Shown: piece after piece, positions 25,086-37,537 of the stretch
Layout of the letters: every line of letters starts with the position of its first letter
Numbering within the stretch: the stretch's first letter is position 1
Assembly (NCBI RefSeq): GCF_003704095.1
Contig: NW_020846169.1
Location: 124,001 to 188,000, forward strand
Source: Pocillopora damicornis
Lineage: Eukaryota
DNA length: 64,000 nucleotides
Direction: 5' to 3'
Notes under the pieces: model-generated
Seen by the model: only the letters and a program-made list of their open reading frames with translations
The model's database searches: none
Told to the model about the DNA's origin: nothing
Position numbers and translations under genes: made by a program

Positions 25086-28000
25086 CTAACGCTCAAAGCG
25101 ATGGGAAGACAACCTAGCATTTCTTCCAAATACTGCCCTGACCAGCTCTGCGCCGAACGGACCGTAAACAAATATCTGGTGGCTGGAATATTCCATCTGA
25201 AACAAGATCCGCATTACTGATACAATCATGGTGGGTCCACCGCATAATAGTACTTTGTGCTCCAACACTTGAGGACCTACCAGGTGATTACTGATCATGT
25301 CCTTGTCGATATGCCCCTCTCCGCCCTGCCAAGTCTCTTGCCCTGCACCTTTAGAGAGTGTGTAGAACACTCGGAAACGCTCATCACGTGCACTGTGGTC
25401 ATCTAACTCACTCTTGAACATGAACTCTGACTCAGTTTCCGCGGAGTACAACATGGACACGGAAGTCTGATCTCCAGGGTCTGCCATGATGTCACGCACA
25501 ATTTGAATACACGGAGTGGCACCTGAACCGCTGGCCACAAGACTAATATGTTTGACTGAATTTGACTCGTACTCAAAACCCCCACAAGGGCCTCGGAACT
25601 CCACCAGGTCACCTAAATATCAAAAATGCAAAAATCATGAAGGCAAACCTGAGACAGTGTAAATAAACCCATGGATGATATTTTCTAAACTTTTAACGCT
25701 TAGGCTCGAATCAATTAAGCTTTTCACTGAGTCTGGGCTTTTCCATCCTTCCCTTCCACCAACCCCAATACCGGGGGGGGGGGGGGGGGGGGCAAAATAG
25801 CGACATGCTTCCCGGCAACCTGAAAACCGACCAGTTATAGGACTTACTATCAAGTGAATATGACTTTTATGAACAATTGGGGCCATGACAGAGTAGTTAG
25901 AATCCGCTGGATAACACCATCTTGGATTGACTACGCACTGAAGGAAATGACATATTGTTCTTGAAATAAAATCTTGATTACAGTAAATAACTCTAACTCA
26001 GGAGTAGTCTTCAGGGTCCTTAGCGATTCCTCTGATGACTACTGCTCAGACCACACGATTAACCTGGTTCAGGAAGCTCATGACACGTTGCCCAAATAAC
26101 ATTCTAAATTGTTAAGGCAATGATGCATCTCACACAACAGCTCTCTGTTTGAATAATAAGGAGTCGGCTATTTTAACATAGCTTAGCCGATAAATCAAAC
26201 CTCGTATTTTAAAAAAACCGCCTTCAATTCAGCCGAACGTCTTGTAATAGCCAATACTAGAAAAACCTTTATTCGCCCCATGTAATCTNNNNNNNNNNNN
26301 NNNNNNNNNNNNNNNNNNNNNNNNNNNNNNNNNNNNNNNNNNNNNNNNNNNNNNNNNNNNNNNNNNNNNNNNNNNNNNNNNNNNNNNNNNNNNNNNNNNN
26401 NNNNNNNNNNNNNNNNNNNNNNNNNNNNNNNNNNNNNNNNNNNNNNNNNNNNNNNNNNNNNNNNNNNNNNNNNNNNNNNNNNNNNNNNNNNNNNNNNNNN
26501 NNNNNNNNNNNNNNNNNNNNNNNNNNNNATATGACGTAGATACCAAACAGAGAGAAACGCACGTTAATAAAGAAAGTACAGTCTGTGTGGAGAAATCAAG
26601 AAATTCATGACAACTACTTTTTCTTTTTTTAAAGTTAAATACTGCAATAGGCTTGCATTATATCACTGAAGTTCTGACAAATTTTTTCTACTTTATTTAT
26701 TATGTATAAATCTCCTTACTTGAAGTTGTCGAGTAATCAAGAACCTTACGTACTTTCCTTTTTTTACCTGGAGTAAGTGCCTTAAATCTCTGTGATAATT
26801 GACCATGACTCTCAAACTTCATGACCAGGTCTATTCGGCCAAATTCTGTGGTGGCGTTTACTGGCGAAAAATACCGCTGACAGTACTTCTCGCCGTCCTT
26901 GTCTAGAGGTACTCTGACTTGGACATACTGGCCCGGTAGACAACCAGTATGTTGAGATGCTTGGGGTAGAGCGAACTGAAATTCTGCTTGCTTATCTCCC
27001 ATTGGTATCACGGACAGGAGCTTTAAGGGGAAAAAACAGTCGGGGCTCAGAGCGGCTAAGTGTTCTGTTCCATTTACATCAGTGATGGGGCCTCTACTGA
27101 CCGATGGCCGAGTATTGAATGGGTTATCAAATTCTGTGTCCTGGTAAGATGATGAGTCACTCTTCTCCAGTGGTCCGTTCATTTCAACCTCACGCATCAA
27201 CTGCTGGGCGATTTCCAACTTTTCTTCGTCCTTTAGTTTTAGCAACTCGGCATTCAGGGTACGTCTATTGGCTGATTGAGACCTAAGATCAAAGGCAATA
27301 GCGCAGTGTTTAATTCAGGTTTCCTTTATCATATCATTCATACGTTCAACTGGCTCAACTTATCCTGGCCGTTCAAGCCTGGTTTCAACCGGCTCAACTT
27401 ATCCTGGCCGTCTATGCCTGGTGTCAGACTAATTCAAAAGAAAGCTTGGATTCAGACTGACCTAAGTTGTCACTGCGTTCGCAACACTAATTTCGAGGAT
27501 AGATCGGAGAAGATCGAGGCGGATCAGGGGAGAGTAGATTTATATTATATAATTAATTCCCTTAAATCCATAAAATTGAAAATGTGTCTACATACAATAA
27601 GTAGGCATCGGATCTTTTTTGTGAAATACTCTTCCCAGCACGAGGAACTGCAACTACTGAAGTGTTTCCACGTGTGTGCAACGGTCACAGAGAACTGACA
27701 GGCCAACGCTAGTTTGTTCCGGTGGGATGGAAAAAGCTAAAAAGTTTTCCCAGGTCACCAAGGGTACTCACAAATAAGTCCAGCTATGTACTCTTCGGGA
27801 ACAATTCTATAAGGTTCTACGTTACTTTATATCGACTGAATTGGCCGGCATTGCGGCCTTATTATCACGGAAGTCGTGTTGGCGCTAAACACTTATGAAA
27901 GTTTTTCGATATGTCATGTTTTCTTCTACTAAGCTCTTTACATGACTCGTATTTAAATCCTTTCCTCAGGTTTCCTCTGCTTTAAGAATTCAAGATGACA

Positions 28001-37000: not shown

Positions 37001-37537
37001 GCTGGGGTGTTAAATCTTTCCAAGCACTTGCAGTTTGCTGGTCGTTACGTTGATGAGATTGTAGCGATAAGTAATAAACACTTTTATCGCTGTTTTACTA
37101 GACAGCAGCACGCATGGTGTTTAGGACATTGAAAAAAAGGAAAAAAATTTAAGTTTGTAACTTGTCAAAATACCATTAAAAACAAATTAAAGGACATATA
37201 ATATCGTTTTCTTTAACAAAATTTGATTCGTGTGTTATTTTTAATACAGTCAGAATAGCATTAAAAGAACGTTTACTGAGGCACATGTTTTCAATGACAT
37301 TTTGTAAAAATGCCGGAGTTCACAGAGTTTGTAGGAATTTTTGGGTAAATTTTTACGTAGCCTGGCGTGCTAATTTAGTGCAAAACTCACCGCATTACGT
37401 CGTAGGGTTGTCCTGCAAAGCTCAATCAACCTCCTTTGAATTTCCTTTTGCTCATCCGTCAGATACCATTGCGGATCCAAATCGAAGGATAAGCCCCAGA
37501 AAGGACGTTGACCCCAGAATTTAGTTTCCAACGACAT
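25086..37537 (-). CDS. Fusion protein: acyl-CoA dehydrogenase-fold domain plus cytochrome b5 reductase/FNR-type FAD- and NAD(P)-binding domains (~778 aa, 11 exons)
   Basis: Exons: 37537-37391, 35550-35370, 34847-34719, 34463-34282, 33711-33597, 33249-33080, 31145-31015, 28909-28788, 28248-28131, 27282-26768, 25612-25086. All introns are GT-AG with consistent phases, totalling 2337 nt without internal stops. ACAD motifs: LTDEQKEI, GLLGLIIPKEFGGMG, SYSDPATG, GSWATS, LGMHGNQS, QACGGAGF, ERLLRD. Reductase motifs: PGQYV, RYFSP, GQLS, RGPCG, ASGSGATP, LCGGP. Confidence 0.88.
26289..26528. other. Assembly gap (240 N) inside the last intron of the ACAD-reductase gene
   Basis: Run of N. The flanking exons still join in phase (ACT CCA G|GT GAC CTG). 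Confidence 1.
27345..27422 (+). repeat. Tandem duplication, ~39-bp unit x2 (intronic)
   Basis: ttcaac.ggctcaacttatcctggccgt...gcctggt occurs twice. Confidence 0.85.
29222..29795 (+). mobile_element. Degenerate PIF/Harbinger transposon 5' part (HARBI1-like transposase N-terminus)
   Basis: Begins with a GGGCC-type terminus. Encodes FRIRFRFRKDSIADLV...LTPM and, after a frameshift, QQVLIALRFFAT...DLFGVS...IHRVS, typical of the Harbinger transposase HTH region. Truncated before the DDE domain. Confidence 0.75.
29800..30310 (-). mobile_element. Degenerate Ty3/Gypsy LTR-retrotransposon pol fragment (RT plus RT-RNaseH linker)
   Basis: NIANDVIVYG (decayed xxDD), KCEFRMSKLTFFSHEL, then in another frame GLVQYSEKFMPD...FHWDIEQQFAFEELKRLITQAETLAYF. 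Confidence 0.8.
30779..30991. mobile_element. ~210-bp TTAA-CCCT MITE copy
   Basis: Ends ccctttaactccca ... tgggagttaaagggttaa. Confidence 0.7.
31560..32760 (+). mobile_element. Degenerate Penelope-like retroelement remnant
   Basis: GFLKGEALRFLRTN (~32420-32465), followed by EYP...FPFVTQ, resembles the Penelope RT C-terminal domain. SIGILRAHLEKGIC near 31880 resembles the N-terminal region. Many stops and frameshifts; boundaries are approximate. Confidence 0.6.
35685..35941 (-). mobile_element. tRNA-derived SINE
   Basis: The minus-strand head gccgcctggttagctcatgcggatgagcgc...ggttcaagacc has Pol III A- and B-box-like motifs, followed by a non-tRNA body. Confidence 0.6.

What the first reader, a model, noticed from the sequence alone, without database searches (positions are those of the whole stretch)
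25086..37537. Hidden 11-exon gene fusing an acyl-CoA-dehydrogenase-fold enzyme to its own NAD(P)H/FAD reductase: a candidate self-sufficient redox system
Seen: nine ACAD exons splice in frame (ATT TG|G TCT CAA) into an exon that runs from the ACAD C-terminal helices through a linker into an FNR/cytochrome-b5-reductase FAD domain (RYFSP, GQLS). The last exon encodes the NAD(P) domain (GSGATP, CGGP). No stop interrupts the ~778 aa. Known: animal ACADs are normally stand-alone mitochondrial enzymes that pass electrons to ETF, while ACAD-fold group D flavin monooxygenases (DszC, HpaH C2, HsaA) need a separate flavin reductase, a role the FNR-family Fre can fill. Inference: the fused module could supply reduced flavin for monooxygenation, or replace ETF to make an NAD(P)H-linked enoyl-CoA reductase/dehydrogenase. 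I do not know of a characterised animal enzyme with this architecture.
Basis: partly seen in the sequence, partly recalled or inferred. Interest (0 to 1): 0.9.

Follow-up and report, generated by a model that had tools for sequence, protein, structure and literature searches.

The report
Coral gene fusing ACAD-fold enzyme to reductase
A coral gene of 11 exons really does encode one protein that joins an acyl-CoA-dehydrogenase-fold flavoenzyme to its own NADH/FAD reductase; the fusion is transcribed, is conserved in many marine invertebrates and has never been characterised, and bacterial relatives point to oxidation of small amines, not fatty-acid breakdown.

Summary
On the minus strand, 11 GT-AG exons (37537 to 25086) add up to 2337 nt, a 778-aa frame. 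Pfam finds Acyl-CoA_dh_N, FAD_binding_6 and NAD_binding_1 exon by exon. RNA contigs from three independent coral studies join 28131|27282 (the fusion junction), 28788|28248 and 26768|25612. The last junction crosses the assembly gap, which lies in the last intron.

The fusion does not rest on splicing. Exon 10 itself starts with a C-terminal helical extension that stand-alone bacterial homologues also carry, then runs into the FAD domain.

The gene is not unique. Full-length fused proteins of about 770 aa, all uncharacterised, occur in corals, many crustaceans, a brachiopod and an annelid; a shorter chiton model also matches. This genome has a second paralogue.

Neither classical ACAD catalytic glutamate is present: Gly replaces one, Arg or an aromatic residue the other. 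Bacterial homologues, about 55% identical, sit beside a TMAO-demethylase-like gene in 34 of 39 well-flanked loci. Other neighbours include copper amine oxidase, a glutamine-synthetase-like gene and Amt, and once a flavin reductase.

Best reading: a self-sufficient enzyme in which NADH reduces the reductase FAD and then the ACAD-fold flavin, probably to oxygenate a small amine. The function is inferred, not shown.

The parts
37391..37537 (-). Exon 1: ATG at 37537, 49 codons, phase 0 donor GCG|GTGAGT. The N-terminus aligns with the N-terminus of bacterial homologues, so there is no presequence.
35370..35550 (-). Exon 2: Acyl-CoA_dh_N (44 bits), includes the conserved motif ETIARYGCPSTAM
34719..34847 (-). 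Exon 3: end of the ACAD N-terminal helical domain up to SDPAT. Its donor GTTTGC is weak and was placed by phase and homology.
34282..34463 (-). Exon 4: ACAD middle beta domain (GGHFWYP..., SWATSAG flavin-contact-type motif)
33597..33711 (-). Exon 5: middle domain (LGMHGNQS); donor G|GTAAGC
33080..33249 (-). Exon 6: first helices of the ACAD C-terminal domain (CWNGIAMGAMD...). The position equivalent to the isovaleryl-CoA dehydrogenase catalytic Glu is Arg here (SPRF).
31015..31145 (-). Exon 7: small ACAD C-domain exon, too short for the ORF list at first pass and found by homology
28788..28909 (-). Exon 8: ACAD C-domain; its donor at 28788 is confirmed by RNA contigs
28131..28248 (-). Exon 9: last core ACAD helices (LRDGRAGWVMGPSNEV); both borders are confirmed by RNA contigs
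28202..28204 (-). Codon GGC (Gly) at the position of the classical catalytic glutamate (the Y-E-G motif of medium- and short-chain ACADs)
26768..27282 (-). Exon 10, the fusion exon. It holds the family-specific C-terminal helices shared with stand-alone bacterial proteins, then the linker, then FAD_binding_6 (about 27020-26768, with RYFSP and GQLS).
27111..27146 (-). Linker motif YQDTEFDNPFNT, conserved in the fused animal proteins of all phyla aligned and absent from the bacterial proteins
26289..26528 (.). Assembly gap (N), inside intron 10. It is not coding and was not filled.
25086..25612 (-). Exon 11: NAD_binding_1 (about 25541-25215; GSGATP, CGGPTM), a conserved tail of about 28 aa (25172-25089), and the stop codon at 25088-25086
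24953..25085 (-). 3' untranslated region, at least as far as the oligo-dT RNA contig reaches
   Evidence: run X10, record 5

Best explanation
One expressed coral gene encodes a 778-aa cytosolic two-flavin enzyme.

Module 1 (exons 1-9 and the start of exon 10) has the acyl-CoA-dehydrogenase fold. It belongs to a distinct, uncharacterised family that lacks both classical catalytic glutamates.

Module 2 (the rest of exon 10 and exon 11) is an FAD/NADH module of the cytochrome-b5-reductase type.

Inferred mechanism: NADH reduces the reductase FAD. The electrons or reduced flavin then reach the flavin of the ACAD-fold module, which uses them with O2 to oxygenate a small substrate. The most likely reaction is N-oxygenation of a small, possibly methylated, amine such as trimethylamine or dimethylamine. 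In this reading the protein is a 'self-sufficient' version of what bacteria do with a stand-alone homologue plus a separate reductase.

Shown here: the gene structure, the spliced fusion transcript, the domain identities, conservation across phyla, the missing catalytic Glu, and the bacterial gene neighbourhoods.

Inferred only: the direction of electron flow, the use of O2, and the substrate.
For: Single transcript. RNA contigs from three studies (X1, X4, X10) join 28131|27282, 28788|28248 and 26768|25612. The skipped stretches end CT..AC on the + strand, and single contigs of 1479-1952 nt cover both modules at one depth.

Fusion inside an exon. Bacterial stand-alone proteins of about 470 aa align through LDxW..N.R.L..E..K...K..LA..LL, which in the window is the first ~40 residues of exon 10.

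Domains. Pfam supports all three domains. An AlphaFold model of the Lingula homologue has pLDDT 88 and pTM 0.87. Foldseek matches b5 reductases at target-normalised TM 0.79-0.89 and ACADs at 0.83-0.89, and no solved chain covers both modules.

Conservation. Fused proteins occur in corals, decapods, amphipods, barnacles, an isopod, a mantis shrimp, an ostracod, a brachiopod, an annelid and a chiton. In the tree, animals and bacteria are separated by one branch with SH-aLRT 100, which is compatible with a single fusion event.

Not a classical dehydrogenase. The Y-E-G glutamate is Gly in every member, and the IVD-type position is Arg or aromatic. The N-terminus aligns with the bacterial N-terminus without a presequence.

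Amine and N-oxide context. Among 39 bacterial loci with at least 6 kb on both sides, 34 have a Tdm-like gene (NCBIfam trimethylamine N-oxide demethylase, 806-840 bits). 27 have an upstream PhyH gene and 28 a glutamine-synthetase-like gene. Counted within 4.5 kb over 84 loci, 39 have a copper primary-amine oxidase and 11 a MOSC gene. In one lineage the ACAD gene is directly followed by a PF01613 flavin reductase gene, next to the Tdm-like gene, FTHFS and DAO.

Pathway gaps. The known methylated-amine pathway needs a TMA oxygenase and a DMA-oxidising step next to Tdm (PMC5520151).

NADH preference is an inference. It rests on the best matches being NADH-cytochrome b5 reductases (7rom 102 bits, 2eix).
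Against: By HMM score the ACAD module is nearer to CoA-ester dehydrogenases and reductases than to known ACAD-fold monooxygenases. Rv1679/FadE16 scores 177-209 bits and acryloyl-CoA reductase 92-118 bits, against 33-71 bits for HsaA, 37-70 bits for SfnB and at most 46 bits for DszC. The top structural neighbours are also true ACADs.

A flavin reductase gene next to the bacterial homologue was seen in only one lineage. The small ORF that recurs downstream of tdm in 33 loci has no recognisable family.

The coral genome has no Tdm and has several FMO-like genes that could already make N-oxides.

Absence of the usual bacterial TMA monooxygenase in genomes carrying the homologue could not be shown. 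Most of the 15 genomes tested have weak FMO-like matches and two have moderate ones.

Gene neighbourhood in bacteria need not carry over to animals.
Confidence: 0.5

Rival explanations
1. NADH-dependent enoyl-CoA (for example acryloyl- or crotonyl-CoA) reductase. The b5-reductase module would replace ETF and push NADH electrons into the ACAD flavin to reduce a C=C bond. This would parallel flavoenzymes that carry a fumarate-reductase-type FAD_binding_2 domain followed by a b5-reductase module.
For: Apart from Rv1679/FadE16, the best named HMM matches are acryloyl-CoA reductase AcrC (92-118 bits) and other CoA-ester enzymes. The closest solved folds are true ACADs, including the Bcd of the Bcd/Etf complex. 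The nearest non-family hits of the window's FAD domain are FAD_binding_2 + FAD_binding_6 + NAD_binding_1 fusions (P0025, P0038), which shows that this kind of reductase fusion exists. From general knowledge, reduction of enoyl-CoA by NADH is thermodynamically favourable.
Against: The proton donor/acceptor Glu needed for alpha,beta chemistry is missing at both known positions in every member. Bacterial homologues sit among amine and N-oxide genes (Tdm-like, copper amine oxidase, GS-like, Amt, MOSC). No acyl-CoA ligase, hydratase, thiolase or ETF recurred among the neighbour clusters seen in 3 or more loci.
Confidence: 0.2
2. Substrate dehydrogenase or oxidase run the other way. The ACAD-fold flavin would oxidise a substrate (an amine or a CoA ester), and the b5-reductase module would carry the electrons away to NAD+ or to another acceptor.
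For: The architecture alone does not fix the direction of electron flow. ACAD-fold oxidases without the Glu base are known (nitroalkane oxidase; from general knowledge).
Against: From general knowledge, b5-reductase and FNR modules operate from NAD(P)H to the acceptor. Reducing NAD+ from an acyl-CoA or an amine is energetically unfavourable. No haem or Fe-S acceptor domain is present.
Confidence: 0.08
3. A catalytically inactive or moonlighting ACAD-fold module, in the way ACAD9 serves as an assembly factor, with the reductase module doing an unrelated job.
For: The catalytic Glu is missing. One database model of the family was auto-named 'complex I assembly factor ACAD9-like', but that is only a name.
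Against: About 70 positions are invariant across the animal and bacterial members aligned, with 46-64% identity to the Lingula protein. That fits a conserved active site. The bacterial proteins lie in what look like catabolic operons.
Confidence: 0.05
4. Two adjacent genes (an ACAD and a reductase) joined only by read-through or by an assembly artefact across the gap.
For: The assembly gap lies between the last two exons. Contigs cannot by themselves prove a single molecule.
Against: The junction 28131|27282 is spliced in contigs of three studies at the same depth as the flanking exons. The fusion point lies inside exon 10. The same fused order is found in dozens of species from several phyla and in a second paralogue of this genome. 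The gap lies between the FAD and NAD halves of one reductase module, not between the ACAD and reductase modules.
Confidence: 0.02

Closest known systems
Uncharacterised fused ACAD + FAD_binding_6 + NAD_binding_1 proteins of marine invertebrates (for example P0114 Montipora capricornis, P0116 Porites harrisoni, P0124 Acropora millepora, P0112 Lingula anatina, P0108 Owenia fusiformis, P0011 Homarus americanus)
   Same: Same domain order and similar length (about 760-790 aa). They are collinear with all 11 exons of the window gene and share the family motifs, the linker motif DFDNPF and the C-terminal tail.
   Different: The window copy is only about 40-75% identical per exon to the other corals' proteins. 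It is the more divergent of two paralogues in this genome, but it keeps the canonical GxGxxP NAD motif (GSGATP), which the other coral copies have changed to a MSCQP form.
Stand-alone bacterial ~470-aa ACAD-family proteins (P0135, P0154 of Leptolyngbya, P0159 of a Hyphomicrobiaceae bacterium; found in at least 581 genome stretches)
   Same: About 55% identical to the animal ACAD module. They have the same N-terminus, the same missing Glu and the same C-terminal helical extension.
   Different: They have no fused reductase. They are encoded in islands with Tdm-like, PhyH, copper amine oxidase, GS-like, Amt and MOSC genes, none of which was found linked in the coral.
Classical acyl-CoA dehydrogenases (short-chain, isovaleryl, butyryl-CoA; PDB 8i4p, 7p98, 4kto, 1rx0, 5ol2)
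   Same: Same fold (target-normalised TM 0.83-0.89 for the homologue model) and the best sequence matches in the PDB (81-83 bits).
   Different: There is no catalytic Glu at either known position and no mitochondrial presequence. The protein is fused to an NADH reductase instead of using ETF.
ACAD-fold (group D) two-component flavin monooxygenases: DszC, HsaA, HpaH oxygenase, SfnB. ACAD-fold N-oxygenases such as isobutylamine N-hydroxylase and the nitrososynthases are added from memory.
   Same: ACAD fold without the dehydrogenase base, and dependence on a separate source of reduced flavin. N-oxygenation of amines by this fold has precedent (from memory). One bacterial lineage has a PF01613 flavin reductase gene directly downstream.
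   Different: The HMM scores to these families are low (33-71 bits). The reductase here is covalently fused and of the b5-reductase/FNR type, not the PF01613 type.
NADH-cytochrome b5 reductase (CYB5R; PDB 7rom, 2eix, 1umk) and the b5-reductase module of nitrate reductase (5yly)
   Same: FAD_binding_6 + NAD_binding_1 with the RxY(S/T), GxxS, GxGxxP and CGxxxM motifs. 102 bits to 7rom, and target-normalised TM 0.79-0.89.
   Different: There is no membrane anchor and no cytochrome b5 partner domain. A conserved tail of about 25-28 aa follows the usual C-terminus. The module is attached to a flavoenzyme instead of a haem or molybdenum domain.
Natural fusions of a flavoenzyme with a b5-reductase-type module (FAD_binding_2 + FAD_binding_6 + NAD_binding_1, P0025 and P0038; from memory, the architecture of trypanosomatid NADH-fumarate reductase) and the fused styrene monooxygenase StyA2B (from memory)
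   Same: The principle is the same: a built-in NADH reductase makes a flavoenzyme self-sufficient (for the architecture).
   Different: The catalytic domain has a different fold. There is no sequence relationship outside the reductase module.

Membership tests
Acyl-CoA dehydrogenase superfamily (fold) | Three-part fold: N-terminal helical domain, middle beta domain, C-terminal helical domain, recognised by the Pfam Acyl-CoA_dh models | tested here: met
   Acyl-CoA_dh_N scores 44 bits in exon 2. Full-length homologues hit Acyl-CoA_dh_N, _1 and _2. The homologue model matches ACAD structures at target-normalised TM 0.83-0.89.
Classical acyl-CoA dehydrogenase (alpha,beta-dehydrogenation, ETF-linked) | Catalytic glutamate at the Y-E-G position (MCAD/SCAD type) or on helix G (IVD/LCAD type) | tested here: not met
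   Gly stands at the Y-E-G position (window codon 28204-28202; MGP or MGA in all members). Arg (window) or Tyr/Phe/Trp stands at the IVD-type position.
Classical acyl-CoA dehydrogenase (alpha,beta-dehydrogenation, ETF-linked) | Mitochondrial import presequence in animals and electron transfer to ETF | tested here: not met
   The N-terminus starts at the same conserved K-x-W-G..FWGL motif as the bacterial proteins, with no extension. Interaction with ETF cannot be tested with these tools.
Rv1679/FadE16 family (NCBIfam NF049984) | Score at or above the curated cut-off of 600 bits | tested here: not met
   Homologues score 177-209 bits. This is the best-scoring named model but lies far below the cut-off.
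ACAD-fold (group D) two-component flavin monooxygenases | ACAD fold lacking the dehydrogenase catalytic base | tested here: met
ACAD-fold (group D) two-component flavin monooxygenases | Dedicated NAD(P)H:flavin reductase partner | tested here: inconclusive
   In animals a reductase is fused, but it is of the b5-reductase type. In bacteria a PF01613 gene lies directly downstream in only one lineage and was not among the recurrent neighbours.
ACAD-fold (group D) two-component flavin monooxygenases | Sequence membership in the DszC, HsaA, HpaH or SfnB models | tested here: not met
   Scores are 25-71 bits against cut-offs of 430-850 bits, lower than the scores to CoA-ester dehydrogenase models.
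ACAD-fold (group D) two-component flavin monooxygenases | O2-dependent oxygenation through a flavin C4a-hydroperoxide | not testable with these tools
   This needs enzyme assays or stopped-flow spectroscopy.
Cytochrome b5 reductase / FNR-type reductase module | FAD_binding_6 with RxY(S/T) and GxxS/T, followed by NAD_binding_1 with GxGxxP and CGxxxM | tested here: met
   FAD_binding_6 scores 50.7 bits (RYFSP, GQLS) and NAD_binding_1 69.3 bits (GSGATP, CGGPTM). The best PDB matches are 7rom and 2eix.
Cytochrome b5 reductase / FNR-type reductase module | Electron delivery to cytochrome b5 haem | not testable with these tools
   No b5 domain is present in the protein.
Fused ACAD + b5-reductase family of marine invertebrates (uncharacterised) | Collinear full-length similarity that includes the linker motif and the C-terminal tail | tested here: met
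   tblastn with seven family proteins gives 9 to 11 collinear exon hits each, all 11 with the four complete models. The exon-by-exon alignment fits over the whole length.

The most novel reading that the evidence does not exclude
The animal fusion is a self-sufficient heteroatom monooxygenase of bacterial-type ancestry that makes N-oxides such as TMAO in marine invertebrates, independently of FMO enzymes; in corals it might instead S-oxygenate dimethyl sulfide. Its stand-alone bacterial relatives would then be a so far unrecognised oxygenase of trimethylamine or dimethylamine that works with TMAO demethylase. That would fill a gap in the methylated-amine pathway of cyanobacteria and other bacteria.
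Probability: 0.2. Interest if true: 0.85.

Novelty: new variant of a known kind. Interest (0 to 1): 0.62.

Why it matters
If the reading is right, three things follow.

1. A flavoenzyme architecture not described in the papers I could search would be established: an ACAD fold wired to a b5-reductase-type NADH module. It would show a new way in which animals made a two-component bacterial-type oxygenase self-sufficient.

2. A conserved and, in decapods, multi-copy enzyme of marine invertebrates would get a function. That function may be tied to osmolyte or N-oxide chemistry.

3. The stand-alone homologues would become a candidate for an unassigned oxidative step next to TMAO demethylase in bacterial methylated-amine catabolism. 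That pathway is relevant to marine nitrogen cycling and aerosol precursors (PMC5520151).

Even if the substrate guess is wrong, the family is a clean target: soluble, about 770 aa, a high-confidence predicted fold, and clear assays.

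Tried and rejected
Joined model. Exons were searched one by one by reference, and full-length database homologues stood in for the whole protein.

Literature. Six full-text searches found no paper on this architecture or on the bacterial family. They covered ACAD with b5 reductase fusions, Rv1679/FadE16, dimethylamine with ACAD and flavin reductase, TMAO demethylase in cyanobacteria, TMAO biosynthesis in crustaceans, and TMAO demethylase gene clusters.

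Earlier scan notes. They held nothing relevant.

Tdm in the coral. No Tdm-like gene was found, only a 31-bit GcvT-type match, so the bacterial pathway is not carried over whole.

FMO test. The idea that genomes carrying the homologue lack the usual FMO-type TMA monooxygenase was inconclusive. Of 15 genomes, 4 gave no match at E 1e-10, 8 gave only 42-55-bit N-terminal matches, and 3 gave 69-154 bits. DmmB-like genes were present in 2-3 of 5 genomes.

Phylum-wide co-occurrence. I abandoned it because only 2 of 201 sampled cyanobacterial genomes carry the family.

Small conserved ORFs near tdm (168 or 156 aa). They have no Pfam or NCBIfam match, so I cannot call them reductases.

First contexts. 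The Hyphomicrobiaceae locus (Obg, acyl-CoA ligase, APH kinase) and locus L008 (SDR, P450) were not representative.

Top hits of the representative search. They are unnamed single-exon fragments and say nothing on taxonomy.

Structure. The model gives folds only. I sent no complex-prediction job.

Element-like ORFs in intron 7 (29399-30310). They gave no Pfam hit at E 1e-3.

Full report
WHAT IS THERE

The window comes from a coral. The RNA runs that hold the sequence are labelled coral, the nearest full-length relatives are scleractinian, and the assembly is 234 Mb in 4393 contigs.

On the minus strand between 37537 and 25086 the ORF list already shows ten coding pieces. tblastn with seven full-length homologues adds an eleventh at 31145-31015. 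The four complete queries give 11 collinear hits each. The N-terminally short models miss only the first exon or two. Nothing else in the window matches.

I placed every border by reading the sequence and checking phases:
- E1 37537-37391
- E2 35550-35370
- E3 34847-34719
- E4 34463-34282
- E5 33711-33597
- E6 33249-33080
- E7 31145-31015
- E8 28909-28788
- E9 28248-28131
- E10 27282-26768
- E11 25612-25086

All introns are GT-AG. Only the E3 donor (GTTTGC) is weak.

Each exon was used by reference, and database homologues stood in for the whole protein.

DOMAINS

Pfam, exon by exon, gives:
- Acyl-CoA_dh_N in E2 (2.9e-11)
- FAD_binding_6 in E10 (2.4e-13)
- NAD_binding_1 in E11 (5.3e-19)

The other exons are too short to score alone, but they align along the whole length of the family.

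THE GAP AND THE FUSION JUNCTION

The program asked that the gap be tested first. It lies at 26289-26528, inside the last intron. That intron separates the FAD half (E10) from the NAD half (E11) of the reductase. It does not separate the ACAD module from the reductase.

I laid Logan contigs of four coral RNA runs from four studies on 24900-28900. Three of them (X1, X4, X10) contain single high-depth contigs that skip exactly 26768 to 25612, 28131 to 27282 and 28788 to 28248. Each skipped stretch ends CT..AC on the + strand, which is GT..AG on the gene's strand.

These contigs are 1479-1952 nt long and run on for 745-759 nt beyond 28900 into the upstream ACAD exons. The codon split across the gap-containing intron is G|GT. 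It gives ...TP-G-DLVEFRGP, the conserved FNR-type strand, and homologues show no residues missing there. A low-depth unspliced contig also crosses the gap collinearly. I neither used nor report its letters.

The fourth run (X3) holds only low-depth unspliced pieces. Those are most simply pre-mRNA or DNA carry-over. Contigs cannot show transcript starts or ends, so a minor internal start cannot be excluded. The dominant form is the spliced fusion.

THE FUSION DOES NOT DEPEND ON SPLICING

Stand-alone bacterial homologues of about 470 aa extend beyond the ACAD core. Their extra stretch is helical and conserved, with the pattern LDxW-Q..N.R.L..E..K....K..LA..LL. In the window this stretch is the first ~40 residues of exon 10. 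The same exon then continues through a linker into the FAD domain.

HOW COMMON IT IS

A search of 1.8 billion representative proteins with exon 10 found only 66 hits at E 1e-3 or better. Among them were full-length proteins of 770 and 882 aa with ACAD + FAD_binding_6 + NAD_binding_1.

A search with the 770-aa lobster protein listed dozens of fused proteins. They come from:
- decapods (several copies per species)
- amphipods, including a hadal species
- barnacles, an isopod, krill and mantis shrimp
- an annelid (Owenia)
- a brachiopod (Lingula, two copies)
- a chiton (a shorter model)
- corals (Montipora, Porites, Acropora, Desmophyllum)

A separate look-up added an ostracod protein. All are named 'uncharacterized' or carry misleading automatic names. 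The ESM Atlas has one cluster of 142 eukaryotic members with this architecture. In a tree of the ACAD module, animals and bacteria are separated by a single branch with SH-aLRT 100. That is compatible with one fusion event early in animal evolution.

This genome has two copies. The one on contig C2992 is 61-88% identical per exon to the Montipora protein. The window copy is only about 40-75% identical per exon to any other coral's protein. Both copies have the same 11-exon plan. The window copy keeps the canonical GxGxxP NAD motif. The other coral copies read (S/G)-(A/G)-M-S-C-Q-P at that place.

WHAT KIND OF ACAD-FOLD MODULE IT IS

By sequence, the closest named model is the uncharacterised Rv1679/FadE16 family, at 177-209 bits against a cut-off of 600. 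Next come acryloyl-CoA reductase and other CoA-ester enzymes. The ACAD-fold monooxygenases HsaA, SfnB, DszC and HpaH score 25-71 bits.

The best solved relatives are ordinary ACADs and NADH-cytochrome b5 reductases. An AlphaFold model of the Lingula homologue is confident (pLDDT 88, pTM 0.87). It matches b5 reductases at target-normalised TM 0.79-0.89 and true ACADs at 0.83-0.89. No solved chain covers both modules; the query-normalised TM never exceeds 0.45.

The residue-level alignments show that the classical catalytic glutamate (Y-E-G) is Gly in the window (codon 28204-28202) and in every family member, bacterial ones included. The alternative glutamate position used by isovaleryl-CoA dehydrogenase is Arg in the window and aromatic elsewhere. 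The N-terminus starts where the bacterial proteins start, so there is no mitochondrial presequence. This is therefore not a classical ETF-linked beta-oxidation enzyme.

A FUNCTIONAL LEAD FROM BACTERIA

The stand-alone homologues are about 55% identical to the animal module. In cyanobacterial contigs the gene is followed within 2 nt by a DUF1989 + GCV_T gene. NCBIfam scores that gene as trimethylamine N-oxide demethylase at 806-840 bits, far above any other model though below the full-length cut-off.

In another lineage the ACAD gene is followed directly by a PF01613 flavin reductase gene. A Tdm-like gene, formate-THF ligase and a DAO-family gene lie beside them.

I then fetched 80 loci from species-representative genomes. 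Most are Leptolyngbya-type cyanobacteria. Others are Alphaproteobacteria, Acidobacteriota, Latescibacterota and Armatimonadota. Of the 39 loci with at least 6 kb on both sides:
- 34 carry a Tdm-like gene
- 28 carry a glutamine-synthetase-like gene
- 27 carry a PhyH-family dioxygenase, usually directly upstream on the same strand
- 27 carry a solute-binding protein
- 22 carry an Amt transporter

A copper primary-amine oxidase (993 bits) sits between the ACAD gene and tdm in 39 of 84 loci. A MOSC-domain gene is adjacent in 11. Some islands also hold genes with the domain composition of N-methylglutamate synthase.

These are islands for catabolism of methylated amines. The published pathway is Tmm, Tdm, DmmDABC and GmaS, and the DMA step is missing from many marine bacteria (PMC5520151). 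The islands found here contain Tdm and enzymes for primary amines, but no recognised enzyme for TMA to TMAO or for DMA to MMA. The ACAD-family protein and the PhyH protein are the obvious candidates for those steps.

Flavin-hydroperoxide chemistry suits N-oxygenation. ACAD-fold amine N-oxygenases are known (from memory: isobutylamine N-hydroxylase and the nitrososynthases).

MECHANISM PROPOSED

NADH is the likely donor, inferred from the b5-reductase kinship. It reduces the FAD of the C-terminal module. The reducing equivalents pass to the flavin of the ACAD-fold module, which activates O2 and oxygenates a small amine.

The animal protein would then be a covalently self-sufficient form of a bacterial oxygenase-plus-reductase pair. 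Fusions of another flavoenzyme domain (FAD_binding_2) with the same reductase type exist (P0025, P0038), so the wiring principle has precedent.

Confidence by step:
- one gene and one fused protein: about 0.95
- electrons flow from NADH into the ACAD-fold module: about 0.6
- oxygenase chemistry: about 0.45
- a methylated-amine substrate: about 0.3

CAVEATS

- The module looks more like dehydrogenases than like known ACAD-fold oxygenases.
- A flavin reductase neighbour was seen only once.
- The coral has no Tdm and has several FMO-like genes.
- Absence of FMO-type Tmm from genomes carrying the homologue could not be shown.
- The family is rare overall in cyanobacteria, in 2 of 201 sampled genomes.
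- The main rival is an NADH-dependent enoyl-CoA reductase. It fits the sequence kinship but not the missing Glu or the gene neighbourhoods.

NOVELTY AND VERDICT

The gene is not hidden in the sense of unknown, because equivalent models are public. I found no characterisation of the family, of its bacterial relatives or of the architecture.

I rate it a new variant of a known kind: a flavoenzyme with a built-in reductase, in a combination not yet described. Interest is moderately high, mainly because of the new and testable link to amine and N-oxide chemistry.

Noticed in passing
G000:C2992:464331-475302 (+), fetched as L090 and L091: A second paralogue of the fused gene in the same genome, with the same 11-exon plan. 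It is 61-88% identical per exon to the Montipora protein and looks the same as database protein P0119. Its NAD-binding motif reads GGMSCQP instead of GxGxxP, whereas the window copy keeps GSGATP.
   Followed up: partly
window 27111-27146 (-): The linker motif Y-Q-D-x-E-F-D-N-P-F-N/S-T is conserved in the fused proteins of all animal phyla aligned and is absent from the bacterial proteins. In the model of the homologue this region is fairly confident (pLDDT 70-88), so it probably packs against a domain. Its role is unknown.
   Followed up: no
window 25089-25172 (-): A conserved tail of about 28 aa follows the NAD domain (FVYGxFGxE/Q...AVYG....L..H). It extends beyond where ordinary cytochrome b5 reductases end (the PDB matches stop at about this point). 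It could reach the other module.
   Followed up: no
L046:4511-16856 (typical); also L009, L017, L023 and others: A recurrent bacterial gene island: GS-like and solute-binding genes on one strand, then PhyH, the ACAD-family gene, copper primary-amine oxidase, a Tdm-like gene, an unknown ORF of about 170 aa, Amt, an unknown ORF of about 140 aa, and DUF6885. It looks like an undescribed variant of the methylated-amine utilisation pathway.
   Followed up: partly
window, upstream of 28900 (the exon 2/3 junction, about 35370/34847): RNA contigs of two studies both stop exactly 745 nt beyond 28900, and a third stops at 759 nt. By exon arithmetic that is 9-23 nt into exon 2. The cause is unknown (allelic difference or alternative splicing) and could not be examined.
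   Followed up: no
window 29399-30310, inside intron 7: ORF fragments on both strands look, by eye, like remnants of mobile elements. None gave a Pfam hit at E 1e-3, so this stays an impression.
   Followed up: partly
window 7291-8373 (-), 9189-10088 (+), 12375-13145 (+), 43984-44997 (+), 52729-54285 (+), 62503-63795 (-): Other coding pieces in the window: a protein with three RRM domains, two tandem class-I glutamine amidotransferase ORFs, two rhodopsin-type GPCR genes, and a NIT + HNOBA + guanylate cyclase gene. None has an evident link to the fused gene.
   Followed up: partly
P0025 and P0038 (database proteins found with exon 10): The nearest non-family relatives of the window's FAD domain are proteins that join a fumarate-reductase-type FAD_binding_2 domain to the same FAD_binding_6 + NAD_binding_1 module. 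This is a parallel case of a flavoenzyme with a built-in reductase.
   Followed up: partly
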